A stretch of DNA of 64,000 nucleotides, from IMG/VR virus record IMGVR_UViG_3300040801_002079, positions 248,001 to 312,000 of that record; one strand, written 5' to 3'. A model generated the notes under the pieces. The model saw nothing but the letters and a program-made list of their open reading frames with translations. It had not been told where the DNA came from and did no database searches. Below, piece by piece: positions 21,586 to 55,067 of this stretch (position 1 is the stretch's first letter; each line of letters starts with the position of its first letter). Position numbers and translations under genes: made by a program.

Positions 21586-24500
21586 GTGAATAATTCGGAT
21601 TATAAAAAAAATAGGATAAACATTAATGAATTGCTACCGGACCTTATTTCAAATACTGAAATAAGTAAAAGTATTCAAGAAAATCTGTTTAATCGATTCC
21701 TATCTAAAGATGAATACCAGAGAGTTATAGGTGTTATAGGAACTCCCGACCCAAGAGACCCAACTTCATTTAGAATTCCAGAAAACAATGAATACCGAGA
21801 AAATTATCAGTTGCAGCCCGTTGCTCATGCAAAGGTTGGCTCAGTAGATTACCATTTGTCGTTTCATGATTTGATGAGACGATTGGAGTATTTGGGAGTA
21901 AATACTGAAAGATTTGATGAGTGGGGCAATTCGATGCAATTCAATTGGGTCCCACCAATTGACATTGATAAAATTATAAACTATCAAGATTATTTTTGGG
22001 TATCGGAAAATTTTGATGACGTACCACAATATATAACGGTTAAAAACTTGTGCACTTGGGCGCAAGCTCGTTCTATACAAGCAAAGAAGACTGTTATTTC
22101 TGTACAACAGCCCATTGACATCAACTCAATAAATGAAAATATAATCGAATTATCAGGAAATGTTGTTTCCAAGTATAGTCCGGGAGAACACTTAATAGTT
22201 TACAATAGTAATGAGAGTGAATATGTCGTTGTTACAATTAAAACCGTAGATTTTAATCTATCATCATCTAATACTGATATTATTGTTGACACTAGATTAT
22301 CATCTGATCTCAATACCGCAGCAAGAATCGAATTTCCCATAATTGGAGTTATATCCGCAGAAAAATCAATAATTTTAGAGGGGGATTTGACAAATATTTT
22401 CGCTCCGGAATATATATTCTCTTTAACTAAGTCTATTGGGACGGTAACAACATACCATACGGTTTCAAGCGCATCATATGATACACTGCAAAATCAAACA
22501 ACAGTTGTACTGAAAGAAAACCTTGAAGCCTTAAACTGGAAATATGCTTCAACCTTGCCTCAAATCTTAATGAATGATGAGGAGGCTAGAAGCAGATGTA
22601 ATGAAAATTATACTAGCACCTTGTTTACACAATGGAAAGACGAATACATTGGAAGGCTAATATGGTCACCTAATAAATTAATTATTCAATCTTCTGGATC
22701 GGGACGAACAGAGCTAGGGGAAGATTCTTTTTATGAAGAGAGTTTACTACTTGTAACGTCCGGGGTTAAGAGAGGGGATGTATTAAATATATTAGAAGGT
22801 AAAAGTGAAGGCCAGCATGAAATCATAAGCGTTAATCAAAATCCGGTAACGGGGAGCGTATTGGGGGTTGATCCAAGCGCATTCTTCTTTACAGAATATA
22901 ATGTATCATATCAGATTTATAGGGAACAAACCACGGCTCTAATAACACGATCCGAAGATGATGTACCATCATCTCCAGAAATATATGACCTATGGATAAA
23001 TTCAGATGATGGTAATTTATATCAGTGGACTGGAAGCACATGGAGATTGGTTGCAAACAACATTGATGTACTTGTCGCTTCTTTATATGGCAGACACCTA
23101 CTTGACTTCAATGAAGATGATGCGTGGGCCAAAGAAAATAAATGGATTCACAAAACACAGCTTAGTACATTTGAATCTGCCACACGAGCGCAAATTCCAA
23201 TAATTGAATACGAACCATATATTAAAAAATCAACAACGTCATATTCTAGCAAGGAATGGAAATATAGGGTTGATTCAACTAACGAATACTTTGAAACTGA
23301 TGCGTCACCCAGAATGTTTGAAATTCAGGACATTCGCATAACAGAGAGTGGTAATGAATTTTCATTCATGACGGATACAAAAATATTACTTCATGAAAAA
23401 TTTGGCAACTTGGTTGACGATATTCAAATTGGTGAAAGGATAGAATTTAATGACTTTTCAGAAAACATCAGCACAAAAATTGTTAAAGATGTTGAATTTT
23501 ATAGAGTGTTTCCGAAGTCCAGACACCAAACGGTAATAACATTAACAACCCCCGTAAATGATCCATTTGATCTACCTGTAGGGGCACACATTGGTCCACA
23601 GGAAACATCACTGGGTGATCCTTGGATTGGTATAGATGAAGGGCACTGGCTATTTGAAGGAGTTGTTAATATTCAGGCATCAAGTATTGAGCCTGAGCCA
23701 AACCCAATGCTTAACGAACTATTTGAAAGTAAGTATGTTCCGAAACAAACCGGCGCACGAACGCTTGATATACAATCATTAGATTTTGAAGACATTGAAT
23801 CATTAGAAGTTATAGAAGCACTGGAAACTATAGTACAGGGTGCATACAACTATGAAACAAATATTGGACCTGTATGGCAAACATTTTCTCTCCCGGATAG
23901 TATACAAATAACCGCTCCAAGGTTCGTATTTGACCCCACACTTCATACATTAGCACTATATGAAGATTATCAAGAGGGTGACATGCGTGTATACATAAAT
24001 GGTGTCAGACAGTATGGCAACTTCTTTGATATTAGATCAGAAATATATCCAGATTTTGTTGGTGGCATTCAGTTTGATGATGATACGGTTATTACTAACC
24101 TAGATGTTATACGAATTGAACTGGGCGAATATGCTAAGTATGAAATAGGAAAAAGGGCGGTCACTATTCCAACTGAAGCGGGACTAGAGCCATACAATTT
24201 AGTAGATGTTCGGGCAATGGAGCAAATAAAAACTGATACAAATCAGTACATTTATTTTAACGTTTACGATGTTGACACTCAGCCGAAAATATTTGCTAAT
24301 ACTATATTCAAGTATAATGAATCCGATGAATATTCCGTAAGCCCATATATTCTGGAGCGTGTTGTTGCCGATCCAGCCACCAAAACCTATGAATTTGTTA
24401 ACGAATTGTTCAACCATGAAACAGAAGAACTATATTGTTATTATGACGCAAAGTATGTTGGTAACGAACTTCAAAATCTATGGAAGAGAGGATTAAATAA

Positions 24501-27500
24501 CGAACAGTACGTACCTAAAAAAATAGATAACACTGATTACTGGAAGCTTCCAAATCAGATGTACTATAACCCACAGCATAGAAATAGAAGAGTTGTATCT
24601 TTTCAGGATGTATATAGACATTTTAGAAGTATAGCCCAGTCCCAAACCACTCCCGGAATATATTCAAATGTAACAAACCTATTTCATCTTGATGATAGGG
24701 TCAATTTCGGCTTGGGTGGAACAATAAAAGAACATAATGATAATTTTGATATCTTGATATCAACCATCTTTTTAAACAATGTAAATCCTATAAAACTCTA
24801 TCAGTTTGCGCATGATCAATATCGTTTAAACTTTAAATGGTTGGAAGAAAAATTTATCGATAGTTTTGAAATGCTAGTAAGTGATACTCAGTCCAACACG
24901 ACTGATACACTATCCGCCACTATTTCAGAATATTTAATAGATGCATTTGAAACGAATGATAAACTATCTCAATGGTTTGGGGATAGCTCCACATATAATG
25001 AAGCAACTGATACTGGAATAAAAAACTGGATTGCAACAACTCCATATTTTGGAATGAATTATCTGTACATGCCGTACATGAATATTGATGAAAGATATGG
25101 AATTTATGAATTGTTCCATCATGATGGTCACCGTAGACAAATAGAGTTATCAGCTTCACTGAAGGAGCAATTAAATAAACGTCTATTGGCTCTAGATATA
25201 GCGTCAGAACAAGTAGTTAATAATGATCTTGATCCATTTCCCTTCAGCATAGAGGGTCGTGCTGTAAAACGCGGAGATTATCTGGTTAGGACTGTCCTAC
25301 AGGATAAAACTCGTAAAGTATACAGAAGAAACTACAATAACGTATGGGAAGAATTTCCATATGAAAAGATATTAGCAGAAACATATCTGGATGTCGAGAA
25401 AAGGCTTTATGATAACTGCCCATCATATGATGAGCTTGTTTTCGATTTTTCAACGGTTGAGAATGACGTTGAATATTCTTCCACGCTTGAAAAGCAATTC
25501 GTTAAATACGGCAATTCCAGAGGTATAGATTATCTATACGCCAACGAAATATTTTACACTGGGACTGACCCATTCACTTGGAATTATTATTATACCCCAA
25601 TACCGTCACATCCCGTGACAGGAATAGAAAGTTCAGATGTTGCGGGTAGCTGGCAAGCATTATATGAGAAAGTTTATAATACCCCATACCCACACCTTGA
25701 ACCATGGAAATTGCAAGGATATAGGGATTTGCCGGATTGGTGGCTAAATCGTTATAAGGTAACAGATGGTACCAGAAGATGGTCATCCGAAATGTGGGAT
25801 AATGTTCTAGCTGGAAGAGTTCCCACTGGACGAACCCTTCCTGACGGTGAAATATCGGCTGGCGCAAGAAATGAAGTAAATTCTTATGATTACGTATCTG
25901 TAAATATCGACAATTTTCCAACACATGATGGATACGATTCGGATGAATTGCTTCCACCATATTGGAATTCCAGCAATTCCGAACTAAGTACAGTTAGGTC
26001 ATTATATGATCCAGATGCTAATGATTTCATACAATCACCCGATCTGGACTTTGATTGGGGACAAAATGGAACACAAGAATGGAAATGGAGTGCATCCGCT
26101 CAAAGAATTTATGATGAGTTAATAACAGCATTTAAATTGCAGCCATTAAAATTCACAGCAAGAACATACGGAATAGAAAAGGCTGAGATAAATTGCCTTC
26201 AAATTGATTCCTTAACAAAGTCTCCATACGCCGTTAGAAAAACTCTATTTCATGGAGATATAGACCCAGACACTAATAGTGTGATTACAATTAATGGTGC
26301 TGGGCAATGGTATTCACACTACAACAGAAGCCATAATTTTGATGGCGAATCATCAGAATATAGAACACTATGGAAAGATTGGGATATCCCCCTATCATAT
26401 GAATTTAATGCATTCATTGATACGCCCAGCTTCAGAATAGAAAATGCAAATTTCGACATAACAACCAAAGATTATAGCGTGGAAGTTAAAAAGACTCACG
26501 GTATAGATTTAAAATCAATCTTTGGGCTAAGGGCAAGAATATTATCAGTTCCTTCTAAGTATGCAAAGAACCGCGATTATGGTTTAGGGTGGACCGCAGA
26601 GTTCTTTAACACATCCCCTGATAATAATGATATAAATGTTTATGGAACAGAAAACTATGACTATAGGGTAAAATCGGATAATGAGACCCTGCGCTTATTT
26701 AGTTACCCAATATCTGGAGCAGATGTATCCAGACAAAGAGGTCTACAAGTAGCGAATTATAATCAACAAGCACTATTAAGCGACGAGACACTATATCCAT
26801 CAACCGTAACTCCATTTTTTGCTGACATTTTAATTGATGGAATAAAGCAAATTGAATTGGTTGTGCGTGGCACAGAAGTTAAAACTATATCGGATTTGCT
26901 GGATTCTCTTAATTTACAGCTTGGAACCAACGCTACTGCCACACTTGAACAGGGTAACATTTATATAAGAAGTGATACTACCGGGGCAAGTTCTTCCATT
27001 GAAATAACAGATAGAGGATTGTTTACAACATCACATCAATCATATAGTTCTTTACAGCCGCCAACAACAGAGCCTTTAGAATTTAATCGTGTATTTACAA
27101 TTAAAGGAAACTACACATCGGTATTTCCTGAAAAGAGCGAAGTTGTAATAACAGATTCTACTAATTATAACGGAACATATACCGTGTTTGGAACATTTTA
27201 TGATGTGCCAAATAATGAAACACATATTCACGTAGATGAATTTGTAACAATACCAGATACCACAGTTGATGGATTTATAGAACCTGCCGATGCACTAACT
27301 TTACCGGAAGAGTGGGTGACTGGAACAGAATTATTCTTAAATGGAAACTCCGATGCGCCTCCACCATTAGATAATACACTACCGTATTACATCATTCGAT
27401 TAAGCGATAGAGAATTTAAATTGGCTGAAACTGAAGTTCTAGCATATAAGGGGACAGCAATATCCGGAATCTCCGACAGTTTTATAAACACCATGATAGG

Positions 27501-30500
27501 CAGGCTACAGCGCACATTCCGAGCATTGAGCGGTCAAACGATTGATACGGTATGGCGGAGACACTATCCAGATAAACGAGTTGTCGAGTCTCACCCCAAT
27601 CTAGTCAGTATATCCGGCATACAAAACATGATTGATTTTGTAACGGGATATGAAGATTACTTATATGATCGCGGATTTGTATGTAAAAATCCAGATGGGG
27701 ATAATTATGACCTATCTACTGGAAGAACTAATGATTGGCAGTTTGAATTAGAGAAATTTATATCTAACCTTTATAGGCTAAGAAGTAGAAGACAAGAAGA
27801 GCCATTGGAATATAAAGTATCAGTTAATAGTGTGGACAATAACATAACACTATTGGATGGTGCATACTCAAGTTGGCAGAATGGTACGCGGGTTGTAATT
27901 GTGGAAGGAGATGATGAGGCCCAATTACCCCAACCATTTGATTCAACACTATCGAACGCATTCCCCTATTACATTATACGAAGCGCTCATGATAATATTT
28001 TCCAGTTAGCCTATACCCATTATGATGCAATGAGGGGCAATGCCATTGATATCATAGATGATGGAGTGGGGGATATAAGGCTTAAAGTCTTTAAGAGATT
28101 GACAAATGCTCCAGAATTAGAAATAAACCCACTAAAATCATCAATATGGGTTAAAAATGATCAGGGTGTTATGAATGATGTATTTCATGGCACAAACCTT
28201 GATGTTGTCACATCACAAGCTGTATTTGATAACAATAAAAGGGAAATGAACAGCAATGAAATAATTGTATTCAGACAGGATCATGAAAATAAAATAACAA
28301 TAACAAATGAATTACGCAATTATACAATAGATGCTAAGGTTCCCATCAACAAATATATGGCGGGAATGAATTTATATTATGATGGATATGAGCATATCAT
28401 AACATTTGAAGAATATTCAACCGACGACTCTTTGATATACGATCCATTCTTGGGCGTATCAACACTTAACTTCAGAATCGAATTTAACCGACAGAATGAT
28501 ACTACCTTTAGGCCAAATGTTGGTGGATACACATTACTTGATAATGAATTATTGCAAAATCTAGAGTCCTCTGTAAATGACGTTAGAATGATGTACGACA
28601 CACATAAGACACTGGAAACTAAGCAGTTAACAGAATATGTTCGCAAATCATTAGGATTCGATGAAAAGGATTATATGAATGACATTTCATTAAATCCTAA
28701 AACACAGTTCCTATTTTATAAAGGAATGATTCAGAATAAGGGTACAAATTTTGCCGTAGATGCATTCACAAATCAAACGCTATTTGAAACTGCCGAAATC
28801 GATGAATTCTGGGCGTATAAGCTTGGAGAATTTGGTGGAGCAAGAGAGCTTAGTTATCCTGAAATGATACTAACCCCCGATGATGTTGTTCGCAGAGAAC
28901 TAAGATTGGAGTTCTTATTGCCGGATGAAGGAAGTCTACATTCGTCATTTGTTCCGGTTAGAATAACTGATCCGGAAAGATGGTGGGACCAGCCAGATCA
29001 ACTACAAACAATAAAACCATATGACGGATTCTGGTTCAATATTGATGTTCTTGAGCAAATCGGAAATTCGGAATACAACATAGAATACATTAATGGTAAT
29101 TACATCTTAGATTTGGGTAAGATTGTTAACTCTGTAATTTTGACACATTACAATCCCGAAAGTGAACTCGTTGAACAACTGCAAGAGAATTTACATTTCG
29201 TCTATATGAGTAATAGGGCGATAAAGTTCATAAGAGATGCGGATGATGTTCCCGTTGCAGATTTGCCCCCAGACTCTGCGTTAAAATATCAAGACCTAAC
29301 TGTTAATGTGGTAACATATCACTATGATGCCATAAACCCAGCTAAAGTTATTGACAGAGACTATGACCTTGGTAATTATGATGATACGGGAATTGATGCT
29401 AAGGCCGCAAAAGTTATAACGGAAGTGCCGGTTTGGAATCCAGCCTTTGGACAATATTCACATATTGTAGATTTTGTTACTAATATAAAGAGTAGCGAAG
29501 ACCAAGCAAACTATACCAATTATCCAGACGGCACTTCCCCCGATTTAACACCATGGCTATTTGACATGGTTGGTACCGTATGGATGGACAATAGTATAGA
29601 GCATTATGTTCCATATTATGACAAAACTGCCATGCCTAATTTCGATAAAAGAATCTTCTTATGGGGCACATTGGCTGAATGGGGCGATATAGCACTATAT
29701 GAGTGGTCACAATCACTACTTCCACCAGAAGAATGGGACGGAGACGGTTCCCCTAGAACACTAATCTATAAAAATGATGCAGCAGACCCTGTAAATGATG
29801 ATCCCATTTGGGTTGAAAATCCAGACCCCGATGTGCATGAAGATTATATTGCAGGCTTGGTTACTCCAACCAATAGCACATCCTTAACTGGTGAAATAGA
29901 GGCATATATAAATGGTGAATATGATCAAACCCTAACTATAAACACCCCGGATGATTTTGTAACATATGCTCTAACTTTGCCGCAAGAGGTTCATGTTCAT
30001 TTGATGCATCGGGGGTATGTCCCAACAGAGGATGATCTAAGTGATAATCTATATAAGTATGATACGCCATACTGCAAAGAGACTAGGTATAATTCGGATA
30101 GTAATGAACCATATGATGTATATTATTTCTGGGTAAGAAACCGTGAAACAAAGAGAGAATTTCAGAATGGCAGCGTAACAGTAGTTGAAGCGGAAAAGAT
30201 ATCTAAGAATATGGATTCGCCGTATATGATTATTGAGGGATTGCGTAGCAATGAATTTGGTTATGGAATAATTTACGGCGCAACATTTGATCCATTTGAA
30301 TATGATGTTCCAAATAGATATACTCACGCAATAATAAAAGGACTAAGAGGAACTGTTAAGGGACATTCTCGCTATACGTTAAGGTTCACACGAGACTTTA
30401 ACTTGAGAGATGAGATAGATGATGATCTAAATCTAAAAAATGTCCACGAGGAATGGAAGTTATTTAGAGAAAAGCAGTTTTCCAAGATTGATATCGATTT

Positions 30501-31800
30501 ATGGGAAAAAATAATCGAATCTATGATAAATCATCCTGTATCTAATAAGGTTGTGGATGTGGATACAACAATTCCTACGCTCAATAGAATTCTATATGAT
30601 GACCTTTATCAAAAAGATACAAAATATGGATTAGGAACTGAACAGGTATTAACTGACGGCGAACTTGCCATACAGACGGTCACATCCATTCTGGATGATC
30701 CAGATAGGGAATTTATCGGCATAAACATCGATGAGTTTAGGCAGAATAATGGGTTTACAACGCAAACGGATATTGTAAACTCAATGTATGAAATTTATAA
30801 TTCATTCTCTGTTGTTGATGTCAATTATATATTTTTCCAAGTTTTACTAGATGCATTCAGCCTTAAGAAGGAATTTAAAGACATATTTAAAACCTCTTGG
30901 GTTGCATTGCAAATTACTCAAAATATTACGTCACCTGAGAATATTGAACTTGATATTGTTGAAGTTGAAGAAGGCGGGGATTGTTCGCTACCCATAAGTA
31001 ATATACCAGATGAAGAGATTTCACCACCTCTCCCATCCGCATCAATGACCCCGACTCCAACGGTTACGCCAACCATGACTCCAACGGTTACGCCCACAAC
31101 TACCGTTACCCCAACCGTTACCCCGACAAATACGGTTACACCAACAAATACTGTAACTCCAACTGTTACTGTTACACCAACACTAAGTGCTACAGTTACG
31201 CCTACTGTAACAGTCACTCCGACAAATACTGTAACTCCAACACAAACTGCTACGGTTACGCCAACTCCAACACAAACTGCTGCGGTTACCCCAACAGTGA
31301 CCCCAACAGTGACTCCCACAATAACCCCAACGGTTACACCGACTCAAACTGTTACACCTACGGTAACGGCTACGCAAACTGTTACACCAACCGTTACACC
31401 AACAAATACGGTTACACCAACTCAAACAGTGACTCCGACTCAGACTGTAACTCCAACAAACACGGTTACACCTACGGTTACACCAACACAAACTGTTACC
31501 CCGACAAATACGGTTACACCTACGGTAACGGCTACGCAAACAGTGACTCCGACCCAAACCGTTACACCTACTGTTACACCGACAAATACGGTTACACCAA
31601 CTCAAACCGTTACACCTACTATTACACCGACTCAAACAGTATCCCCAACGGTTACACCAACTCAAACCGTTACACCTACTGTTACACCGACAAATACGGT
31701 TACACCAACTCAAACCGTTACACCTACTGTTACACCGACAAATACGGTTACACCAACTCAAACCGTTACACCTACAATAACACCTACCCAATCTGGATAA
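21586..31800 (+). CDS. Giant virion structural protein (baseplate wedge gp7-like, 3404 aa) with a C-terminal Thr/Pro mucin-like tail
   Basis: Follows gp6; own late promoter; YQLQP, IDIDKIINYQDYFW, PHLEPW, YKGMIQNKGT, IFKTSW motifs of large jumbo-phage wedge proteins. Confidence 0.7.
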   Translation: MNNSDYKKNRININELLPDLISNTEISKSIQENLFNRFLSKDEYQRVIGVIGTPDPRDPTSFRIPENNEYRENYQLQPVAHAKVGSVDYHLSFHDLMRRLEYLGVNTERFDEWGNSMQFNWVPPIDIDKIINYQDYFWVSENFDDVPQYITVKNLCTWAQARSIQAKKTVISVQQPIDINSINENIIELSGNVVSKYSPGEHLIVYNSNESEYVVVTIKTVDFNLSSSNTDIIVDTRLSSDLNTAARIEFPIIGVISAEKSIILEGDLTNIFAPEYIFSLTKSIGTVTTYHTVSSASYDTLQNQTTVVLKENLEALNWKYASTLPQILMNDEEARSRCNENYTSTLFTQWKDEYIGRLIWSPNKLIIQSSGSGRTELGEDSFYEESLLLVTSGVKRGDVLNILEGKSEGQHEIISVNQNPVTGSVLGVDPSAFFFTEYNVSYQIYREQTTALITRSEDDVPSSPEIYDLWINSDDGNLYQWTGSTWRLVANNIDVLVASLYGRHLLDFNEDDAWAKENKWIHKTQLSTFESATRAQIPIIEYEPYIKKSTTSYSSKEWKYRVDSTNEYFETDASPRMFEIQDIRITESGNEFSFMTDTKILLHEKFGNLVDDIQIGERIEFNDFSENISTKIVKDVEFYRVFPKSRHQTVITLTTPVNDPFDLPVGAHIGPQETSLGDPWIGIDEGHWLFEGVVNIQASSIEPEPNPMLNELFESKYVPKQTGARTLDIQSLDFEDIESLEVIEALETIVQGAYNYETNIGPVWQTFSLPDSIQITAPRFVFDPTLHTLALYEDYQEGDMRVYINGVRQYGNFFDIRSEIYPDFVGGIQFDDDTVITNLDVIRIELGEYAKYEIGKRAVTIPTEAGLEPYNLVDVRAMEQIKTDTNQYIYFNVYDVDTQPKIFANTIFKYNESDEYSVSPYILERVVADPATKTYEFVNELFNHETEELYCYYDAKYVGNELQNLWKRGLNNEQYVPKKIDNTDYWKLPNQMYYNPQHRNRRVVSFQDVYRHFRSIAQSQTTPGIYSNVTNLFHLDDRVNFGLGGTIKEHNDNFDILISTIFLNNVNPIKLYQFAHDQYRLNFKWLEEKFIDSFEMLVSDTQSNTTDTLSATISEYLIDAFETNDKLSQWFGDSSTYNEATDTGIKNWIATTPYFGMNYLYMPYMNIDERYGIYELFHHDGHRRQIELSASLKEQLNKRLLALDIASEQVVNNDLDPFPFSIEGRAVKRGDYLVRTVLQDKTRKVYRRNYNNVWEEFPYEKILAETYLDVEKRLYDNCPSYDELVFDFSTVENDVEYSSTLEKQFVKYGNSRGIDYLYANEIFYTGTDPFTWNYYYTPIPSHPVTGIESSDVAGSWQALYEKVYNTPYPHLEPWKLQGYRDLPDWWLNRYKVTDGTRRWSSEMWDNVLAGRVPTGRTLPDGEISAGARNEVNSYDYVSVNIDNFPTHDGYDSDELLPPYWNSSNSELSTVRSLYDPDANDFIQSPDLDFDWGQNGTQEWKWSASAQRIYDELITAFKLQPLKFTARTYGIEKAEINCLQIDSLTKSPYAVRKTLFHGDIDPDTNSVITINGAGQWYSHYNRSHNFDGESSEYRTLWKDWDIPLSYEFNAFIDTPSFRIENANFDITTKDYSVEVKKTHGIDLKSIFGLRARILSVPSKYAKNRDYGLGWTAEFFNTSPDNNDINVYGTENYDYRVKSDNETLRLFSYPISGADVSRQRGLQVANYNQQALLSDETLYPSTVTPFFADILIDGIKQIELVVRGTEVKTISDLLDSLNLQLGTNATATLEQGNIYIRSDTTGASSSIEITDRGLFTTSHQSYSSLQPPTTEPLEFNRVFTIKGNYTSVFPEKSEVVITDSTNYNGTYTVFGTFYDVPNNETHIHVDEFVTIPDTTVDGFIEPADALTLPEEWVTGTELFLNGNSDAPPPLDNTLPYYIIRLSDREFKLAETEVLAYKGTAISGISDSFINTMIGRLQRTFRALSGQTIDTVWRRHYPDKRVVESHPNLVSISGIQNMIDFVTGYEDYLYDRGFVCKNPDGDNYDLSTGRTNDWQFELEKFISNLYRLRSRRQEEPLEYKVSVNSVDNNITLLDGAYSSWQNGTRVVIVEGDDEAQLPQPFDSTLSNAFPYYIIRSAHDNIFQLAYTHYDAMRGNAIDIIDDGVGDIRLKVFKRLTNAPELEINPLKSSIWVKNDQGVMNDVFHGTNLDVVTSQAVFDNNKREMNSNEIIVFRQDHENKITITNELRNYTIDAKVPINKYMAGMNLYYDGYEHIITFEEYSTDDSLIYDPFLGVSTLNFRIEFNRQNDTTFRPNVGGYTLLDNELLQNLESSVNDVRMMYDTHKTLETKQLTEYVRKSLGFDEKDYMNDISLNPKTQFLFYKGMIQNKGTNFAVDAFTNQTLFETAEIDEFWAYKLGEFGGARELSYPEMILTPDDVVRRELRLEFLLPDEGSLHSSFVPVRITDPERWWDQPDQLQTIKPYDGFWFNIDVLEQIGNSEYNIEYINGNYILDLGKIVNSVILTHYNPESELVEQLQENLHFVYMSNRAIKFIRDADDVPVADLPPDSALKYQDLTVNVVTYHYDAINPAKVIDRDYDLGNYDDTGIDAKAAKVITEVPVWNPAFGQYSHIVDFVTNIKSSEDQANYTNYPDGTSPDLTPWLFDMVGTVWMDNSIEHYVPYYDKTAMPNFDKRIFLWGTLAEWGDIALYEWSQSLLPPEEWDGDGSPRTLIYKNDAADPVNDDPIWVENPDPDVHEDYIAGLVTPTNSTSLTGEIEAYINGEYDQTLTINTPDDFVTYALTLPQEVHVHLMHRGYVPTEDDLSDNLYKYDTPYCKETRYNSDSNEPYDVYYFWVRNRETKREFQNGSVTVVEAEKISKNMDSPYMIIEGLRSNEFGYGIIYGATFDPFEYDVPNRYTHAIIKGLRGTVKGHSRYTLRFTRDFNLRDEIDDDLNLKNVHEEWKLFREKQFSKIDIDLWEKIIESMINHPVSNKVVDVDTTIPTLNRILYDDLYQKDTKYGLGTEQVLTDGELAIQTVTSILDDPDREFIGINIDEFRQNNGFTTQTDIVNSMYEIYNSFSVVDVNYIFFQVLLDAFSLKKEFKDIFKTSWVALQITQNITSPENIELDIVEVEEGGDCSLPISNIPDEEISPPLPSASMTPTPTVTPTMTPTVTPTTTVTPTVTPTNTVTPTNTVTPTVTVTPTLSATVTPTVTVTPTNTVTPTQTATVTPTPTQTAAVTPTVTPTVTPTITPTVTPTQTVTPTVTATQTVTPTVTPTNTVTPTQTVTPTQTVTPTNTVTPTVTPTQTVTPTNTVTPTVTATQTVTPTQTVTPTVTPTNTVTPTQTVTPTITPTQTVSPTVTPTQTVTPTVTPTNTVTPTQTVTPTVTPTNTVTPTQTVTPTITPTQSG
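31045..31797 (+). repeat. Coding tandem repeat (VTPT/VTPTQT/VTPTNT)n, about 250 codons
   Basis: Almost only T, P, V, Q, N, A; near-identical 48-bp units at 31573, 31681 and 31729. Confidence 0.97.
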
Positions 31801-31824
31801 TAAATACACATGAGGTAAGGTATA

Positions 31825-32610: not shown

Positions 32611-32646
32611 TGATAAATAGTGTTATATTGCTAGGAGATTATTAAA

Positions 32647-48835: not shown

Positions 48836-50209
48836 ATGGAAAACACCATATTCGTGCAAATTGCAAGTTACAAAGACCCCGAACTAATACCCACCTTAAA
48901 TGATTTAATTGAAAACGCGAAATATCCTGAGAATATCCATGTAGGAATCTCATGGCAACATGATGATAATGAGTCCCTAGAAGATTTCATGGACGCAGGA
49001 TTTGATGTACTGGGCTTCAAAGAGGACTTTTCTGACATTGAAGATTATCAGAAGATTACAGCGTTTGTTAATATGTCCAAGGGTGGAACCAAGCTCTCTG
49101 TTTTAGATATTGATTATATGAATACTAACGGGGCTTGCTGGGCAAGACATAAAATTCAGCAAATGTATTCCGGTGAAAAGTATACTTTGCAGCTTGATTC
49201 ACATCATCGCTTTGTAGAAGGTTGGGATGAATTGGCTGTAAATATGCTTGAGAGTCTACGTTCTGATGAATGTCCCAAGCCTTTATTGACCGCATATATA
49301 CCATCTTTTGATCCTGAAAATGATCCAGCATCAAGAATTCATGTACCATGGAAAATGGATTTTGATAGATTCATTCCAGAAGGTGCTGTATTTTTCAGAC
49401 CATCATCCATAGATGATTGGGAAGAAAGAGATCGGCCCATGCCTGCACGTTTTTTCTCCGCGCACTTTACATTTGCTGACGGGAAGTTTGCTGAAGAGGT
49501 CCAGCATGATCCCAATTATTTTTTCCATGGAGAGGAAATATCATTAGCTGTAAGGGCGTTTACGCATGGGTACGATCTCTTTCATCCTCATCGTGTTATT
49601 GCATGGCATGAGTACACCCGAAAGGGACGAACCAAAGTATGGGATGATCACACTACCCCTGAAAAAAATAAGGGTAAAGTCGAGCTTGACTGGGTTGAGA
49701 GAAACAATCTATGCCATAAGCGAAACCGAATATTGTTTGGAATGGATGGAGAAGACCCGAATCAAATTGATTTTGGAAAGTATGGTTTCGGCAATGTTAG
49801 AACTTTACGAGAGTATGAAGAATATGCTGGTATCAGTTTTGAACACAGAGGAGTCCAGCAGGAAACTCTTGATAAAATGGAACCACCGAACAATCTTCCG
49901 TATGAAACAGAAGAAGAATGGAAAGACACATTCTGTCGATCAAATGACGTAAGAATTTTATTCCACCGAGATGAATTGGGTGAGATAAAGGATGATTACG
50001 ATTTCTTCTATGTCGGCGCACACGATGAAGACTATGACGAAATTTATCGGGAAGATTTAACTGAGGCCAAAATCAAGCAATACCTGCAAAACGAATGGTT
50101 TGATTTTAGACTAATATTTTTAGCAAATCGTATACCTAAAACTTTCACTGTTTGGCCTCACAGCAAATCTGATGGATGGGGTGAACGTATTGTAAAAGAT
50201 GTGGAGTAA
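48836..50209 (+). CDS. GT60-family (Gnt1/Gnt2-like) polypeptide N-acetylglucosaminyltransferase
   Basis: IFVQIASYKDPEL, GACWARH, LQLDSHHRF..GWD, FHGEEISLAVRAFTHGYDLFHP, WHEY.R: GT60/PF11397 motifs. Confidence 0.85.
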   Translation: MENTIFVQIASYKDPELIPTLNDLIENAKYPENIHVGISWQHDDNESLEDFMDAGFDVLGFKEDFSDIEDYQKITAFVNMSKGGTKLSVLDIDYMNTNGACWARHKIQQMYSGEKYTLQLDSHHRFVEGWDELAVNMLESLRSDECPKPLLTAYIPSFDPENDPASRIHVPWKMDFDRFIPEGAVFFRPSSIDDWEERDRPMPARFFSAHFTFADGKFAEEVQHDPNYFFHGEEISLAVRAFTHGYDLFHPHRVIAWHEYTRKGRTKVWDDHTTPEKNKGKVELDWVERNNLCHKRNRILFGMDGEDPNQIDFGKYGFGNVRTLREYEEYAGISFEHRGVQQETLDKMEPPNNLPYETEEEWKDTFCRSNDVRILFHRDELGEIKDDYDFFYVGAHDEDYDEIYREDLTEAKIKQYLQNEWFDFRLIFLANRIPKTFTVWPHSKSDGWGERIVKDVE

Positions 50210-50212
50210 ATT

Positions 50213-52525
50213 ATGTCTGACGGTATTATTTTATCAGCATATGGCTCCCATAATGCTACAATCTCCATGTACCACAACGGTGAATACCACGTTGTAGAAT
50301 TAGAGCGGTGGTTAAATAAGAAGAACTCCGGGTTAGCAGGGTATCTTCCAGCAAAGTATCCACAAAAGGTATTTGATGATGTTATGGAATACCTGTTCGA
50401 AAGAGCAGGTACCCGTAAAGTCGATCTTTTCCTATCCAATTATTTCACTAAGATTGATTTCACTGGATACGATATAAAGGAATTCAGAAGATTTGATCAT
50501 CACCAGTCTCACGCCGCTGGAGCATATTATCAGTCTGATTTTGAAAAGTCTTTAATTTTCACCTATGATGGTGGAGGAAACGGATCATTCTTTAACGTAT
50601 ATATTTCTGAAAGTAGAGATACCGGCCCAAAATTGATTGATAGGTTCGATCTTGATCTGGGCTTCCCTTACATGGTTCTAGCCGACCACTTATCTGATAT
50701 CAGAAAAGAACCTCTAAACATTGGAAATTTGGTTTATGCTGGAAAGTTAATGGGGCTTTGTGCTTATGGTACCGTTCGAGATGAATGGATGCCCCACTTC
50801 ATGAATTTCTATAAAAGGTTCCGGTATGGCGGAGATGCATTTAAGGGCGGTGCTGAAGTGCGAATTTCAGCAACAAACGAACTGTTCAGTGCAATAGGTG
50901 TTAATGATGTTGATTTCGAACTGGAAACCACGCGGTTTGACGGCGAATTTTCATGGGATATTGCGGCAACGTCACAGGCAGCGTTCGAGGAAGTATTCCT
51001 TGAATTAGCAATGCCTTACATTAACAAGTATAGCCCGGAAGAATATCCCATATGCCTTTCAGGTGGATGCGCTCTTAATGTTCTACTCAATGCCCGATTA
51101 TTAAAGATGGTGGGTAAAAACAATATTTTTGTGCCACCAAATACAAATGATTGCGGCATAGCCGTTGGTGGATTGCTAGATTACATAAAGCCGCGTGAAG
51201 TTGTGGATTTGACGTATTCTGGATTGCCCATAATGGACGAAAGAGAGTACACTGCACTAATAGAAGATAATCCTGTAAAGGCTATAGATGAAATCACCTT
51301 AGATGACTTATCAACCCTACTAGCTGAGAATTATATTGTAGGAGTGGTCAGGGGAAATTCTGAGCATGGTCCTAGAGCGCTGGGTAATCGTAGTATATTG
51401 TGTAATCCAGTGGGTGACATGAAGGATGTCCTTAATAAGAAGGTGAAAGACCGTGAATGGTATCGCCCATTTGCCCCACTGGTAAGATATGAGGATGTAT
51501 CCACATATTTTGATTTCGATTCAGAAAGTCGCCACATGACGTTTGTTGCAGATGTTAGGGATACTGAGAAGTTTCCTGCCATCACGCACGTTGACGGCAC
51601 CGGACGGTTGCAGACAGTTACCCGCGAACAAAATGAGTTCATATATGATTTAATAACACAGTTTAAAGAAAAGGCTGGGCATGGTGTTATTCTCAATACA
51701 TCCTTTAATGTTAACGGTAAACCAATTCTTACCAGACTAAGTGATGCCTTTAAGATTTTAATGGATACCGAATTGGATTGTGTATATTATGATGGAAAAA
51801 TAATTTTCAAAAGTAATAGAGAAAATGAATTTAATAATCTTTTAAGGTATGAGCCGGTGTCCATGGATCACACAAACTTCACCGTGTATGTTGACGCTTT
51901 TACAAACAGTGAAGATGAATTCAAAGCACTTCTGCCAAAGTTGGATGAGCTTCAGATGCGCTATAAAAAATTAATGATAGTTCTTAATGAACGTCATATG
52001 CATTTATTTACAGTTAAATCAGATGCCACTATAATACCCAGAGGGCAGAGGCAAATGTTTTATAGGGACATGATTGGTGGCGCAGGCTTTCCAAATAAAG
52101 AAGTTGATTTCATTAAGCCTCTGTGGTTTAAGGACATAATTGAAAACAACGCTTTGCAGTCAGATTATCACATTGTTGTCGATTTAACCTTTGAAAAATC
52201 CTTTGAAAATTTCAAAGAGTTTATGACTAAATATATGGGCGAAGCAGATGTCGCAAATAGTATCATTACTGACACTGAAGACTTTTCAACAATAACAGTG
52301 AAAGAGTTCTTATCTAAGCGCAGTAATTACGTAGAAACCAATGATAGATATCCTAGATTCGGGTTATATGCCGGATATTCAGAACTAATGTCTTGGTTTT
52401 TAAGAACATACGAAGGAAACCTACGCTACCATATGCTAAATGGGCGAGGAGAATCCAGTAGAGACTATTTAGCGATTCAATATTTAGAAAACGAAGGTAA
52501 ATTTTTAATTTTGGAACAACAATGA
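50213..52525 (+). CDS. O-carbamoyltransferase (CmcH/NodU family) with extra C-terminal domain
   Basis: SHNA, ELER, HHQSHAA, DGGG, GKLMGL, SGGCALNV, NDCG, EHGPRALGNRS, REWYRPFAP, HVDGTGRLQTV, LNTSFN. Confidence 0.93.
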   Translation: MSDGIILSAYGSHNATISMYHNGEYHVVELERWLNKKNSGLAGYLPAKYPQKVFDDVMEYLFERAGTRKVDLFLSNYFTKIDFTGYDIKEFRRFDHHQSHAAGAYYQSDFEKSLIFTYDGGGNGSFFNVYISESRDTGPKLIDRFDLDLGFPYMVLADHLSDIRKEPLNIGNLVYAGKLMGLCAYGTVRDEWMPHFMNFYKRFRYGGDAFKGGAEVRISATNELFSAIGVNDVDFELETTRFDGEFSWDIAATSQAAFEEVFLELAMPYINKYSPEEYPICLSGGCALNVLLNARLLKMVGKNNIFVPPNTNDCGIAVGGLLDYIKPREVVDLTYSGLPIMDEREYTALIEDNPVKAIDEITLDDLSTLLAENYIVGVVRGNSEHGPRALGNRSILCNPVGDMKDVLNKKVKDREWYRPFAPLVRYEDVSTYFDFDSESRHMTFVADVRDTEKFPAITHVDGTGRLQTVTREQNEFIYDLITQFKEKAGHGVILNTSFNVNGKPILTRLSDAFKILMDTELDCVYYDGKIIFKSNRENEFNNLLRYEPVSMDHTNFTVYVDAFTNSEDEFKALLPKLDELQMRYKKLMIVLNERHMHLFTVKSDATIIPRGQRQMFYRDMIGGAGFPNKEVDFIKPLWFKDIIENNALQSDYHIVVDLTFEKSFENFKEFMTKYMGEADVANSIITDTEDFSTITVKEFLSKRSNYVETNDRYPRFGLYAGYSELMSWFLRTYEGNLRYHMLNGRGESSRDYLAIQYLENEGKFLILEQQ

Positions 52526-53415
52526 GTGCACATTTTGTAACTTGCATATATAATGGATTAAATCAAAGTGAACTGTGTGGCAGGCTAAATCGTGAACGCC
52601 CGTATAAGTATTCACTTTCAACCATAGCAAAAACCAATAATAAGATTATATGTTATACTTCCCCGGATGAACTGAGTGGAATGCGATCAGATTTTCCAAG
52701 GGAGCGGTTTCCTAATATCGAATTACTCCCATGGAGCCTATATGCAATGACATTCCATAAGCGGGTAAATTCTGTACGCAACAAGGACGCACATATATAC
52801 AGGGAGTCCCCAGACTGGAGAGATCGCTGTGTTGAAATTATGTGGGGCAAATTCTTATTCATAAAAGATTCAATTGTAAACAATCAAGAATCTGAATATG
52901 TATACTGGATTGATGCGGGCATTTCACATCCGGGAATAATTCATAGCAGGTTTAACCCACACTATGATCATAATATTGGGTTTGTTCGGGATTTGGATAA
53001 ATCAACCTACCCCACCACATTTAAAAACGACTTGATATTTGACGAACAGTTTATGGATAGCCTGATTAACTATACGGGTCCCGATAAGATATTGAACGTT
53101 GCTGCAAAGGGGCCACAGCATCCCAGATTAAGCTACGATAATAAATTCATTGGTTCAGTTATAGGTGGAATCTTTGGTGGTCACAGGGATTTAATGGAAA
53201 AATATTGCAATGAGGTTACAGCGCAGTTTGAAGAATATCTTTATAATAAGGAACAACTGTGCAAAGAAGAGCAGATTATGACCGAGATACTTTCAGAAGG
53301 AACTCTACCAATTAAGACATTCATATTTGATACATGGTACCATCCTGACTGGGAAGATCGATATAATGAGTCTCAGGTTAGTTTTTGCGACTTCTTTGAT
53401 GAGATTAGAAAATGA
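52522..53415 (+). CDS. HtrL/YibB-like glycosyltransferase
   Basis: HFVTCIY, IMWGKFLF, YVYWIDAG, IGGIFGG, KEEQIMT. Confidence 0.7.
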   Translation: MSAHFVTCIYNGLNQSELCGRLNRERPYKYSLSTIAKTNNKIICYTSPDELSGMRSDFPRERFPNIELLPWSLYAMTFHKRVNSVRNKDAHIYRESPDWRDRCVEIMWGKFLFIKDSIVNNQESEYVYWIDAGISHPGIIHSRFNPHYDHNIGFVRDLDKSTYPTTFKNDLIFDEQFMDSLINYTGPDKILNVAAKGPQHPRLSYDNKFIGSVIGGIFGGHRDLMEKYCNEVTAQFEEYLYNKEQLCKEEQIMTEILSEGTLPIKTFIFDTWYHPDWEDRYNESQVSFCDFFDEIRK

Positions 53416-55067
53416 AAAATCAACTAACATTAGTTACAGCATTATTTGACTTGGGCAGAGAGCATCTACCCGAGGGGTTCAGTAGGGGGTTTGATCATTA
53501 TCTGGAATGTTTTGAAAAGCTCTTACAGGTCGATTACCCGATGGTTATATTTGTTGATAAGGAATTAAATGATTGGGTAAATGAACGTAGACAGGGTAAA
53601 CAAACACATATTGTAAATAAATCAAGAGAAGATTTAGAGTCATTTCCTTTTTACACTGAAGTTCAAGAAATAAGAACAAGCCAAGACTGGATCAACAGGG
53701 CTGGGTGGATTCCAGATAGCCCGCAAGCTAAGCTCCCATTATATAATCCCGTTGTAATGAGTAAGCAGTTCTTTATGAATGATGCAACACTTATGAATAT
53801 TTTTAATACGAAATATTTCATGTGGATCGATGCTGGCATATCGAATACCATAGGTGATCCAAAGGGATACATTGATGAAGAATTTGGTGATAAGATATCC
53901 AAAGTATTCAGTAACAACAAGATGCATTATCTTTGCTTCCCCTATGAGCCTGCTGCTGAAGTTCATGGATTTGAAAAAGACGCAATGTTTCGCTATGCGG
54001 GACAGGAAACAAAACATGTAGCAAGAGGCGGTATATTCGGTGGCAGCATAGATGCTATTAACATAATAAACGAATCATATTATGCTGAGTTGTCAGAGAC
54101 TATACGATCAGGGTATATGGGAACAGAGGAGAGTATATTCACGATTCTCACATACAAGCACAAGCATCTATGCACTTGTCATATGATTGAGTCTGATGGA
54201 CTCGTGTATAGATTTTTGGAAAAGATAAAGAACATGAAAAAGGATTCATATAACTCATTATTGGCAGTATATGTATTAACCTTTAATTTACCTAAACAAT
54301 TTGCATTATGGGCTGAAAAATTTGAGAAGAACTTAGAAAATAATCTTAGGGATGAAACAGTACGCTATGTAATAAACAACTCCACTGACCCTAGCGTGGA
54401 AGCCGAATACAGCGAACTGTTTAAAAAGTATGGGTTTGAAGAACTTAAGTTTGATAATATTGGGATATGTGGAGCTAGACAGGTAGCAGCAGAACATTTC
54501 GAAGAAAATAATCACAAGTATATGATTTTCTTTGAAGATGATATGTTACTATGTGGATCAGAGGATGAAGGAAAATATTGTAAAAATGGATTCAGAAAAT
54601 ATTTTCCAGATATTATTAGCAAATCTATGTCGATAATGGAAAGTGAATCATTGGACTATTTCAAGCTTTGCTTCTCAGAATTTTACGGTGATAACCATGA
54701 TAACTGGGCATGGTACAATGTCCCACAGGAAAAAAAGGACAAGTGGTTTTTAACAAATAAAAACTCAAGTGACCCAAAGAAGGTTAGAATTCATTACACC
54801 AGTGCATTTAGAGGGGTACCATATGCTGTGGGCGAGTACCACTATTGCAATTGGCCCCTGCTATTTAACAGAGAAGGCAACAGAAAGATATTTCTGGATA
54901 CCAAGTTTGAACATAAGTTTGAACAAACATGGATGAGTTTTGTAATGGAACTTATTGTGGATAAAAAAATTAAACCCGGATGTTTGTTGGGCAGTGCCAT
55001 AACACATCATAGGGAGTTTCACTATAGTAAAGAAATTAGGCGAGAAAATGAACACTACACCAATTAA
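53412..55067 (+). CDS. HtrL/YibB-like glycosyltransferase fused to a GT-A (GT2-like) domain
   Basis: TLVTALFDLGR, YNPVVMSK.F, YFMWIDAG, RGGIFGG, GTEESIF; second half NIGICGAR, FFEDDM. Confidence 0.78.
   Translation: MKNQLTLVTALFDLGREHLPEGFSRGFDHYLECFEKLLQVDYPMVIFVDKELNDWVNERRQGKQTHIVNKSREDLESFPFYTEVQEIRTSQDWINRAGWIPDSPQAKLPLYNPVVMSKQFFMNDATLMNIFNTKYFMWIDAGISNTIGDPKGYIDEEFGDKISKVFSNNKMHYLCFPYEPAAEVHGFEKDAMFRYAGQETKHVARGGIFGGSIDAINIINESYYAELSETIRSGYMGTEESIFTILTYKHKHLCTCHMIESDGLVYRFLEKIKNMKKDSYNSLLAVYVLTFNLPKQFALWAEKFEKNLENNLRDETVRYVINNSTDPSVEAEYSELFKKYGFEELKFDNIGICGARQVAAEHFEENNHKYMIFFEDDMLLCGSEDEGKYCKNGFRKYFPDIISKSMSIMESESLDYFKLCFSEFYGDNHDNWAWYNVPQEKKDKWFLTNKNSSDPKKVRIHYTSAFRGVPYAVGEYHYCNWPLLFNREGNRKIFLDTKFEHKFEQTWMSFVMELIVDKKIKPGCLLGSAITHHREFHYSKEIRRENEHYTN

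What the first reader, a model, noticed from the sequence alone, without database searches (positions are those of the whole stretch)
31045..31800. Mucin-like Thr/Pro/Val tail ends the 3404-aa baseplate protein
Seen: about 250 C-terminal residues of VTPT, VTPTQT and VTPTNT units, roughly half Thr, running to the stop with no domain after it, so it is not a linker. Near-identical 48-bp units near the 3' end point to recent slippage expansion, while 5' units have diverged codons. Inference: an extended, length-variable, surface-exposed glycan acceptor and probable substrate of the GT60 operon.
Basis: partly seen in the sequence, partly recalled or inferred. Interest (0 to 1): 0.75.

Follow-up and report, generated by a model that had tools for sequence, protein, structure and literature searches.

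The report
Mucin-like Thr-Pro tail on phage protein
A giant tail-module protein of an uncultured 317-kb phage ends in a real, length-variable 251-residue Thr/Pro/Val repeat, one of about 18 such stretches in the genome, and phages carrying these stretches almost always also carry a GT60-type sugar transferase, which suggests (but does not prove) a phage-encoded mucin-like glycosylation system.

Summary
Window 31045-31797 encodes 251 residues (49% Thr, 18% Pro, 17% Val) built of VTPT, NTVTPT and QTVTPT units. They run to a TAA TAA stop at the end of a 3404-aa ORF that lies between gp6-like and gp15/sheath genes of a 316.8-kb metagenomic jumbo phage.

The 3' third holds perfect 48-bp units. A second, independent assembly is identical except that it lacks exactly one unit.

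The tail is not unique. The genome has about 18 xTPT stretches, and 8 of them run to a stop. Orthologues carry short Pro/Thr linkers at the same site, tethering lectin-like domains (Laminin_G_3, TIG), or a stub, or nothing.

The GT60 link holds up in comparisons:
- The relative without GT60 (RsoM2USA) has no xTPT anywhere.
- Of 76 viral contigs chosen only for encoding TPTVTPTVTPT, 26 carry PF11397, including 6 of the 7 near-complete ones.
- None of 41 control contigs carries it.
- Virions of the cultured relative XacN1 contain Schiff-positive glycoproteins.

Glycosylation of this tail, its surface exposure and its baseplate position remain inferences. I rate it a new variant of a known kind, with moderately high interest.

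The parts
21586..31800 (+). 3404-aa virion protein of the tail/baseplate module (conserved core aa 1-~3120, acidic/Cys junction, then the tail)
   Evidence: Single ORF. It lies between the gp6-like gene (18600-21512, phrog_10646, 1e-288) and the gp15-like gene (31825-32610, PF16724) and sheath gene (33021-35168). It matches phrog_10938 'virion structural protein' at 1.5e-57. Orthologues are XacN1 ORF325, Xoo-sp13_296, a RAS14 protein and RsoM2USA ORF361. ORF361 was found in purified virions (PMC8504454).
31045..31797 (+). 251-aa Thr/Pro/Val tandem-repeat tail (122 Thr) that runs to the stop and ends in ...ITPTQSG
31555..31775 (+). Recently amplified 3' part of the tail: 108-bp unit x1.9 (91%) containing a 48-bp unit x2.7 (100%, 31648-31775)
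31648..31695 (+). The one 48-bp unit (16 aa, TVTPTQTVTPTVTPTN in the reading frame) that is absent from the second assembly, L009; the deletion can equally be placed at any register within the perfect repeat
   Evidence: Global alignment of window 31000-34083 with L009 shows this as the only difference. The ORF is 16 aa shorter in L009.
48836..50209 (+). GT60-family glycosyltransferase (PF11397 'GlcNAc'), 457 aa, with D121-S122-H123 conserved
   Evidence: PF11397 at 1e-78, 265.7 bits against a cut-off of 21, profile positions 1-351 of 352. DSH and 81 other positions are invariant in 62 homologues.
50213..52525 (+). NodU-like carbamoyltransferase, 770 aa, cassette member
   Evidence: Carbam_trans_C at 1.4e-56 and Carbam_trans_N at 7.7e-28. 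NodU model at 1.2e-46, below the equivalog cut-off. It lies next to GT60 in 31 of 73 loci.
52522..53415 (+). 297-aa protein of unknown family, cassette member
   Evidence: No Pfam or NCBIfam match. Co-oriented downstream of GT60 in 32 of 73 loci.
53412..55067 (+). HtrL/YibB-like protein, 551 aa; the most constant partner of GT60
   Evidence: PF09612 at 1e-17 and TIGR02192 at 1.9e-25. Co-oriented downstream of GT60 in 60 of 73 loci.
55048..55623 (+). Sulfotransferase-domain protein, 191 aa; variable cassette member
   Evidence: PF17784 at 1.4e-25. Present in 8 of 73 GT60 loci.

Best explanation
The tail is a genuine, translated Pro/Thr-type tandem-repeat module at the C-terminus of a very large virion protein of the tail/baseplate module of an uncultured T4-like jumbo phage.

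Shown:
- It belongs to a family of xTPT modules used throughout this phage and its clade. Most are flexible tethers between a conserved virion-proximal part and variable lectin- or adhesin-like distal domains. Some are free C-terminal tails.
- Its 3' end grows and shrinks by whole 48-bp units. Its 5' part is conserved as peptide while the codons drift.

Inferred mechanism:
- In the infected cell's cytoplasm the phage's GT60 enzyme transfers a HexNAc, probably GlcNAc from UDP-GlcNAc, to the Thr residues of xTPT stretches.
- The HtrL/YibB-like, NodU-like carbamoyltransferase and sulfotransferase partners extend or decorate that sugar.
- This would stiffen the 251-residue tail (122 Thr) into an extended, protease-resistant, mucin-like bristle. 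From a rise of 0.25-0.31 nm per residue I calculate a length of roughly 60-80 nm.
- The bristle would project from the periphery of the baseplate, where it could make weak, multivalent first contacts with host or mat polysaccharide, or shield the particle.

The free tail most likely arose from a linker that lost, or never gained, a distal domain and then expanded.
For: Reality and coding:
- One open frame, with codon use like the core and 38 VTPT units written by 22 different 12-mers. Best-matching windows differ by 269 synonymous against 110 non-synonymous codons.
- Unitigs from 3-4 public microbial-mat runs match about 90% of the tail with no differences.
- A second assembly is identical apart from one unit.

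Family of modules:
- Own genome: 18-21 stretches, 8 running to the stop, 5 ending in TPT[Q/V]SG.
- XacN1 has 23 stretches, RAS14 18, Xoo-sp13 21 and RsoM2USA 0.

Exposed, modular C-terminus in the orthologues:
- none (RsoM2USA, L010, L400);
- a stub (RAS14);
- linker plus domain (XacN1, Xoo-sp13; L013 with an AbfB-like hit; L402 with Laminin_G_3);
- linker, Laminin_G_3 and a free 80-aa tail (L401);
- linker, TIG and a repeat of about 230 aa (L403).

GT60 link:
- PF11397 is present in the own genome, XacN1, Xoo-sp13 and RAS14, and absent from RsoM2USA.
- Only 4 of 50,697 cultured-phage records have it, all in this clade.
- 26 of 76 contigs picked by a TPTVTPTVTPT DNA pattern carry it. 23.2 would be expected if every such phage had one copy, given the completeness estimates. 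6 of 7 near-complete contigs have it.
- The controls gave 0 of 41 and 0 of 15 (Fisher 3e-6 and 9e-5).
- The hits span genome sizes of 39-315 kb and at least three GT60 score classes.
- The enzyme looks intact, with an invariant DSH motif.

Literature:
- GT60 enzymes make GlcNAc-alpha-O-Thr on Thr-rich mucins of T. cruzi (PMC9472816).
- XacN1 virions have at least 2 Schiff-positive bands, and its authors proposed that the phage GTs are responsible (PMC5852040).
- Extensive virion glycosylation is known in mycobacteriophages (Freeman 2023, cited in PMC12582341).
Against: - No glycan has been shown on any xTPT protein. The XacN1 glycoprotein bands were not identified.
- The GT60 cassette sits 17 kb away among replication and nucleotide-metabolism genes (DNA polymerase, 5'-3' exonuclease, NUDIX, ThyA), not in the structural module.
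- The co-occurrence could partly reflect shared ancestry.
- One complete 44.6-kb provirus and one 76%-complete 233-kb contig have xTPT but no GT60.
- One GT60-bearing relative (L400/G099) has no tail on this protein.
- Complex prediction of GT60 with a 32-aa tail peptide gave no answer.
- The position in the baseplate and exposure of the C-terminus are inferred from synteny and from domain types in orthologues.
- The copy number of the 48-bp unit is not confirmed by spanning reads.
Confidence: 0.6

Rival explanations
1. The tail is an unglycosylated Pro/Thr spacer or entropic bristle. It would be the remnant of a linker whose distal binding domain was lost, now drifting in length by slippage with little or no function. 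GT60 would act on something else.
For: Orthologues have Pro/Thr linkers followed by domains at this very site. Across 80 environmental loci, free tails are a small minority (9 of 173 classifiable stretches), while internal linkers dominate (153). Pro-rich segments are extended even without sugar (established knowledge).
Against: The tail is 2.5-5 times longer than the orthologous linkers. It is maintained as peptide over many synonymous changes. It shares a conserved end, TPT[Q/V]SG, with four other proteins of the genome whose codons differ. Free tails recur in relatives, for example L401 and two XacN1 ORFs. The near-universal pairing with GT60 would have no explanation.
Confidence: 0.2
2. 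The GT60 cassette modifies a non-protein target (phage DNA bases, or host envelope glycans), and its co-occurrence with xTPT proteins is only a shared clade marker.
For: The cassette lies among DNA polymerase B, 5'-3' exonuclease, NUDIX and thymidylate-synthase genes. Its most constant partner is HtrL/YibB-like, a family named from an LPS-core locus. Phage glycosyltransferases often modify DNA (PMC5852040).
Against: Characterised GT60 members are polypeptide GlcNAc-transferases (PMC9472816). The co-occurrence holds across contigs of 39 to 315 kb and across divergent GT60 subgroups, while 0 of 41 controls carry the gene. XacN1 virions do contain glycoproteins.
Confidence: 0.12
3. The length, or even the existence, of the tail is an assembly artefact of a low-complexity repeat in a low-coverage metagenome.
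For: Coverage in the public runs is only about 4-5x. No contig spans the tail, and unitigs break inside the repeat. The two assemblies disagree by one unit, which an assembler could produce by collapsing the repeat.
Against: Two assemblies agree on every other base of the tail and its flanks. Unitigs from several runs match 30914-31573 and 31650-31775 with no differences. The collapsed 78-nt unitig has 2-4 times the flanking depth, as expected for 2-3 or more copies. No 31-mer of the tail occurs elsewhere in the genome. The frame is kept throughout, and relatives carry the same kind of sequence.
Confidence: 0.04

Closest known systems
Mucin-type PTS / VNTR domains glycosylated by GT60 polypeptide alpha-GlcNAc-transferases (T. 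cruzi mucins; Dictyostelium)
   Same: Thr/Pro-rich tandem repeats and length polymorphism by whole units. A GT60 (PF11397) enzyme is encoded alongside. The T. cruzi gp72 Thr/Pro domain even contains VTPTPTVTPT (PMC3630849). GT60 makes GlcNAc-alpha-O-Thr there (PMC9472816).
   Different: Those are eukaryotic secretory-pathway systems on membrane-anchored proteins. Here a phage would act in a bacterial cytoplasm on virion proteins. The partner enzymes (NodU-like carbamoyltransferase, HtrL/YibB-like protein, sulfotransferase) differ. No glycan has been shown.
Pro-Thr ('PT box') linkers of bacterial cellulases and xylanases, e.g. Cellulomonas fimi CenA/Cex (from my own knowledge)
   Same: Same composition and the same presumed extended, flexible, often O-glycosylated, protease-resistant conformation. 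In orthologues and in most other xTPT proteins of this clade the stretch does link two folded domains.
   Different: Classic PT boxes are 20-40 residues long and always internal. This one is 251 residues long and terminal, with a V/N/Q-TPT periodicity and a conserved QSG end.
Virion glycosylation in mycobacteriophages (Freeman et al. 2023, cited in PMC12582341; details from my own knowledge) and in chlorovirus PBCV-1 Vp54
   Same: Virus-encoded glycosyltransferases would modify structural proteins in the cytoplasm before assembly. In the mycobacteriophages the acceptor sites lie in C-terminal extensions.
   Different: The glycosyltransferase families differ, the acceptor segments are short, and the targets are capsid and tail-tube proteins rather than a giant tail-module protein. 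There is no tandem-repeat mucin-like domain.
XacN1 ORF325 / Xoo-sp13_296 / RAS14 and RsoM2USA ORF361 orthologues
   Same: The core is 27-40% identical over the last 660-730 residues before the tail. It occupies the same place after gp6, and the junction motif is the same (...KTSWVALQI(S/T)QN...C). The same GT60 cassette is present, except in RsoM2USA.
   Different: They end with short Pro/Thr or Pro/Ser linkers plus Cys-repeat and globular domains (XacN1, Xoo-sp13), with a stub of about 45 aa plus 16 aa (RAS14), or with nothing (RsoM2USA). None has a long free tail.

Membership tests
Mucin-like (PTS) tandem-repeat domain | Very high Thr/Ser plus Pro content over a long stretch | tested here: met
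   T 48.6%, S 1.2% and P 18.3% over 251 aa, against T 7.4% and P 4.7% in the core.
Mucin-like (PTS) tandem-repeat domain | Tandem repeats with a variable number of units between individuals | tested here: met
   Tandem Repeats Finder arrays. Two assemblies differ by exactly one 48-bp unit. Only two alleles are known, and assembler collapse is not excluded.
Mucin-like (PTS) tandem-repeat domain | Dense O-glycosylation of the Thr/Ser residues | not testable with these tools
   Indirect only: GT60 co-occurrence and Schiff-positive bands in XacN1 virions (PMC5852040).
CAZy GT60 / Pfam PF11397 (for the enzyme at 48836-50209) | Full-length match to the family profile above the curated cut-off | tested here: met
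   265.7 bits against a cut-off of 21, E 1e-78, profile positions 1-351 of 352. The six-frame search of the genome agrees.
CAZy GT60 / Pfam PF11397 (for the enzyme at 48836-50209) | GT-A metal-binding DxD/DxH motif retained | tested here: met
   D121-S122-H123 is invariant in 62 distinct phage homologues. Reading it as the catalytic motif rests on general knowledge of GT-A enzymes, not on an alignment to a characterised GT60.
CAZy GT60 / Pfam PF11397 (for the enzyme at 48836-50209) | UDP-GlcNAc:polypeptide (Thr or Hyp) transferase activity | not testable with these tools
   No prolyl hydroxylase (PF13640) is found in the own genome or in 4 relatives, which favours Thr over Hyp as the acceptor. 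Complex prediction gave no answer.
Inter-domain Pro/Thr linker | Connects two folded domains | tested here: not met
   Nothing follows the repeat in this gene: QSG, then TAA TAA, and the next gene starts 25 nt later. The feature is met in orthologues L013, L401-L403, XacN1 and Xoo-sp13.
T4-type baseplate protein (gp7/gp10-like) | Profile or structural similarity to a known baseplate protein | tested here: not met
   No Pfam family and only the generic phrog_10938 'virion structural protein'. No PDB sequence relative in three pieces. The Atlas gave no lead. The AF2 model was too poor to search.
T4-type baseplate protein (gp7/gp10-like) | Encoded within the baseplate/tail gene block and present in virions | tested here: met
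   Gene order is gp53-like, gp5-like, gp25, gp6, this ORF, gp15, sheath. The orthologue RsoM2USA ORF361 was identified in purified virions (PMC8504454).

The most novel reading that the evidence does not exclude
Phage-encoded GT60 cassettes and xTPT modules together form a widespread, undescribed mucin-type O-glycosylation system of bacteriophages. Glycosylated Pro/Thr tethers would replace classical fibre shafts to display binding domains; XacN1 shows no fibres by electron microscopy. Free tails such as this one would form a glycan brush on the baseplate whose length is tuned by repeat slippage.
Probability: 0.4. Interest if true: 0.8.

Novelty: new variant of a known kind. Interest (0 to 1): 0.62.

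Why it matters
If the GT60 cassette does glycosylate xTPT stretches, a whole class of environmental phages would build mucin-like glycoproteins with their own enzymes inside bacteria. This class includes cultured Xanthomonas and Stenotrophomonas jumbo phages.

That would:
- extend virion glycosylation, so far worked out mainly in mycobacteriophages and chloroviruses, to Gram-negative jumbo phages;
- give GT60 a bacterial-virus branch with a predictable acceptor motif;
- explain why these phages lack visible tail fibres;
- offer a simple, genetically encoded acceptor tag (VTPT)n plus enzyme pair for cytoplasmic O-glycosylation.

It is directly testable in XacN1 or RAS14, which can be grown.

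Tried and rejected
- Megablast of the whole gene against 50,697 phage records found nothing. tblastn was needed.
- PDB sequence searches with three pieces of the protein gave only chance hits.
- An ESM Atlas look-alike search with the first 1100 aa gave no usable lead (one search was a size slip).
- AF2 of the last 600 core residues, with 7 aligned orthologues, gave mean pLDDT 50 and pTM 0.33. That is too poor, so no fold search was run.
- Complex prediction of GT60 with a 32-aa tail peptide gave 'no answer'. It counts neither for nor against.
- Public reads: only Logan contigs at about 4-5x were available and none spans the tail, so copy number could not be settled.
- A search for further alleles through the unique 5' and 3' junctions found nothing in metagenome contigs. 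In viral contigs it found only the known second assembly.
- A thymidylate-synthase-anchored baseline set gave only 2 loci. I replaced it with a reversed-pattern control.
- I considered hydroxyproline as the acceptor, as in Skp1-type GT60 enzymes. No PF13640 prolyl hydroxylase is present in the own genome or 4 relatives.
- I considered recent gene conversion among the tails of the genome and rejected it. No 31-mers are shared and DNA identity is 64-75%.
- Distant blastn of the tail against cultured phages hit only Xoo-sp13, in a gene annotated 'mucin-16-like protein'.
Full report
**What the window is.** The window is bases 248001-312000 of a 316,801-bp IMG/VR virus record with direct terminal repeats and 39% G+C. 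Public runs that hold it are microbial-mat metagenomes. Around the finding lies a T4-like tail module:
- a gp53-like gene (13703) and a gp5-like OB-fold spike gene (15904-17667);
- gp25 (18161) and a gp6-like wedge gene (18600-21512; phrog_10646, 1e-288);
- the 3404-aa ORF (21586-31800);
- a gp15-like sheath stabiliser (31825) and the sheath gene (33021-35168).

The nearest cultured relatives are the jumbo phages XacN1, Xoo-sp13, RAS14/CM1 and, more distantly, RsoM2USA. They are 27-40% identical over the last 660-730 core residues.

**The observation.** It is correct as written. Residues 3154-3404 (nt 31045-31797) are 48.6% Thr, 18.3% Pro and 17.1% Val. They parse into VTPT (x10), NTVTPT (x9), QTVTPT (x9) and variants, and end ...ITPTQSG followed by TAA TAA.

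Tandem Repeats Finder gives a perfect 48-bp unit x2.7 at 31648-31775, inside a 108-bp unit x1.9 at 91%. The 5' arrays are 67-82% alike. My window scan shows best in-frame identities of 0.69-0.92 up to about 31540 and 0.94-1.00 after that.

The 38 VTPT peptides use 22 different 12-mers. Thr, Pro and Val codon use resembles the core. Best-matching windows differ by 269 synonymous against 110 non-synonymous codons. So the peptide is old and kept as a peptide; only the 3' third is recent amplification.

**Is it an artefact, and does its length vary?**
- A second IMG/VR contig from another sample (L009) is 99.96% identical over 5.5 kb upstream.
- Over window 31000-34083 it is identical except for one clean 48-bp gap at 31648-31695. 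That is one unit, 16 residues.
- Unitigs of three to four public runs match 30914-31573 and 31650-31775 without a difference. They break inside the repeat at 4-5x depth.
- The collapsed 78-nt unitig has 2-4 times the flanking depth, as expected for two or more copies. No 31-mer of the tail occurs elsewhere in the genome.
- No record spans the tail and no further alleles were found.

The tail is therefore real. One-unit polymorphism is likely, but assembler collapse is not excluded.

**The tail is one of a family.**
- Stop-to-stop scanning of the genome finds 18-21 ORFs with xTPT stretches of 20-257 residues. Eight of them run to the stop.
- Five proteins end in TPT[Q/V]SG with different codons and unrelated downstream DNA.
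- Some bearers carry DUF285 (BspA-type repeats) or PKD domains.
- A set of four adjacent paralogues has a conserved N-terminal domain of about 200 aa, then an xTPT linker, then a variable C-terminal part. The same family is found in XacN1, Xoo-sp13 and RAS14.
- Across 80 environmental loci chosen by a TPTVTPTVTPT DNA pattern, 153 of 220 stretches are internal linkers, 11 are followed by a short end, 9 are free tails and 47 are cut by the locus end. Lengths reach 4031 residues.

**What sits at this site in orthologues.** All share the end of the core (...KTSWVALQI(S/T)QN...C). After it:

| Orthologue | C-terminal appendage |
|---|---|
| RsoM2USA, L010, L400 | nothing |
| RAS14 | ~45 aa of Pro/Thr/Ser, then 16 aa |
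| XacN1, Xoo-sp13 | short linkers, Cys-containing repeat(s), ~120-aa domain |
| L013 | ~100-aa linker plus domain with an AbfB-type hit (PF09206, 1e-6) |
| L401 | linker, Laminin_G_3, free 80-aa xTPT tail |
| L402 | linker, Laminin_G_3, linker, further domain |
| L403 | linker, TIG, ~230-aa (SVSESVTPTPTP)n repeat, 15 aa |

This is the pattern of an exposed, exchangeable distal end. 'Not a linker' is thus true of this gene only. The module is linker-type, here free and two to five times longer than the orthologous linkers.

**The GT60 cassette.** Window 48836-50209 matches PF11397 over its whole length (1e-78). Downstream and co-oriented lie a NodU-like carbamoyltransferase, a 297-aa unknown, an HtrL/YibB-like protein and a sulfotransferase-domain protein.

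In 73 IMG/VR loci with a GT60 homologue (45-74% identity), the partners occur at these rates:

| Partner of GT60 | Loci (of 73) |
|---|---|
| HtrL/YibB-like | 60 |
| 297-aa protein | 32 |
| Carbamoyltransferase | 31 |
| Sulfotransferase | 8 |

D121-S122-H123 is invariant in 62 homologues. No prolyl hydroxylase domain is present.

**Test of the link.**
1. *Among relatives.* The own genome, XacN1, Xoo-sp13 and RAS14 have GT60 and 18-23 periodic xTPT stretches each. RsoM2USA has neither.
2. *Among cultured phages.* Only those four of the 50,697 cultured records have GT60. The tail's only distant DNA match is a Xoo-sp13 gene annotated 'mucin-16-like'.
3. *Reverse test.*
   - Of 76 IMG/VR contigs picked solely for an exact TPTVTPTVTPT-coding pattern, 26 carry PF11397, including 6 of the 7 that are at least 90% complete.
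   - Summing the CheckV completeness estimates predicts 23.2 hits if every such phage had one copy.
   - Of 41 contigs picked by the reversed pattern, none has it (0 of 15 complete).
   - Fisher p = 3e-6 for all contigs and 9e-5 for the complete ones.
   - The positives range from 39 to 315 kb and fall into at least three score classes of GT60, so more than one lineage is involved. Phylogenetic independence was not formally tested.
4. *Exceptions.* A complete 44.6-kb provirus and a 76%-complete 233-kb contig have xTPT but no GT60.

**Literature.**
- GT60 enzymes of T. cruzi make GlcNAc-alpha-1-O-Thr on mucins (PMC9472816).
- T. cruzi gp72 has a heavily glycosylated VTPT-type domain (PMC3630849).
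- XacN1 virions show at least two Schiff-positive bands. Its authors suggested that the phage's two glycosyltransferases are responsible, and saw no tail fibres (PMC5852040).
- RsoM2USA ORF361, the orthologue of the 3404-aa protein, is in purified virions (PMC8504454).
- Virion glycosylation is established in mycobacteriophages (cited in PMC12582341; the paper itself is not held).
- No held paper links GT60 or PF11397 with phages.

**Verdict.**
- *Shown:* the tail, its composition, its repeat gradient, one-unit variation between two assemblies, its membership of a genome-wide and clade-wide xTPT module family, the modular nature of this C-terminus, an intact GT60 cassette, and a strong GT60-xTPT co-occurrence.
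- *Inferred:* Thr O-glycosylation by the cassette, the extended bristle form, the peripheral baseplate position, and a role in adhesion or shielding.

I put about 0.6 on the glycosylated-tail explanation, 0.2 on an unglycosylated spacer, 0.12 on a non-protein target for the cassette, and 0.04 on artefact.

Noticed in passing
window 31780-31800; own genome G000:C1 9182-10693(-), 16573-17196(+), 5868-6782(-), 131436-136112(-): Five proteins end in the same peptide, TPT[Q/V]SG-stop. Their codons differ (TCTGGA, TCGGGA, TCAGGA, TCAGGG) and the DNA after the stop is unrelated. This is a conserved C-terminal cap of unknown role.
   Followed up: partly
G000:C1 166958-168544(+); L403 (end of orthologue); L003 14300-14346: Some Pro/Thr stretches are followed by a short hydrophobic end of only about 15 aa..GLKTLFIDWT..DVSTIFITWEN..LWNVLIFPSN. 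It could be a docking strand.
   Followed up: no
G000:C1 172086-178896(-) (L018 5583-12393): Four adjacent paralogues share a conserved N-terminal domain of about 200 aa, then an xTPT linker, then a variable C-terminal part. The same family has 5-6 copies in XacN1, Xoo-sp13 and RAS14, but RsoM2USA gives only one weak hit. They are candidate tethered receptor-binding proteins in phages that show no fibres by EM.
   Followed up: partly
L225, L188, L209, L226 (IMG/VR contigs): Environmental phage contigs encode uninterrupted xTPT/NTPT stretches of about 2,900 to over 4,000 residues in single ORFs. These are far longer than the tail studied here.
   Followed up: no
window 41887-58112: The GT60 cassette is embedded in a replication and nucleotide-metabolism block, not in the structural module. 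The block holds DNA polymerase B (41887-44505), a 5'-3' exonuclease (45628-46653), NUDIX (47913-48341, minus strand) and thymidylate synthase (57246-58112).
   Followed up: partly
window 38190-38651: A TnsA-like endonuclease N-terminal domain ORF (PF08722, 1.2e-20) sits inside the tail-gene block, downstream of the sheath gene.
   Followed up: no
window 32806-32840: A perfect 15-bp tandem repeat (GAAGAGCCAGTAGCG x2.3) lies in the gap between the gp15-like gene and the sheath gene.
   Followed up: no
G000:C1 140922-140999 and 207176-240266: The genome carries 43 tRNA genes, most of them in one cluster. They include 2 tRNA-Thr, 3 tRNA-Pro and 2 tRNA-Val, plus one tRNA with a CUA anticodon (called 'Pyl' by ARAGORN), a possible amber suppressor.
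   Followed up: no
L001 14200-14500 (XacN1 ORF325 C-terminus); L002 14230-14330: Between the Pro/Thr linkers, the XacN1 and Xoo-sp13 orthologues carry one or two short Cys-flanked acidic repeats (CG.G.DDR..ED.EGRITEDG.CR). No Pfam search covered these repeats (the queries start further downstream).
   Followed up: no
L003 14359-17415 (RAS14, gene after the orthologue): The next gene in RAS14 encodes a 1018-aa protein full of S/T-x-D-G-x-x-W motifs that look like BNR/Asp-box repeats. There is no Pfam hit at 0.01. It may be a separately encoded distal module.
   Followed up: partly
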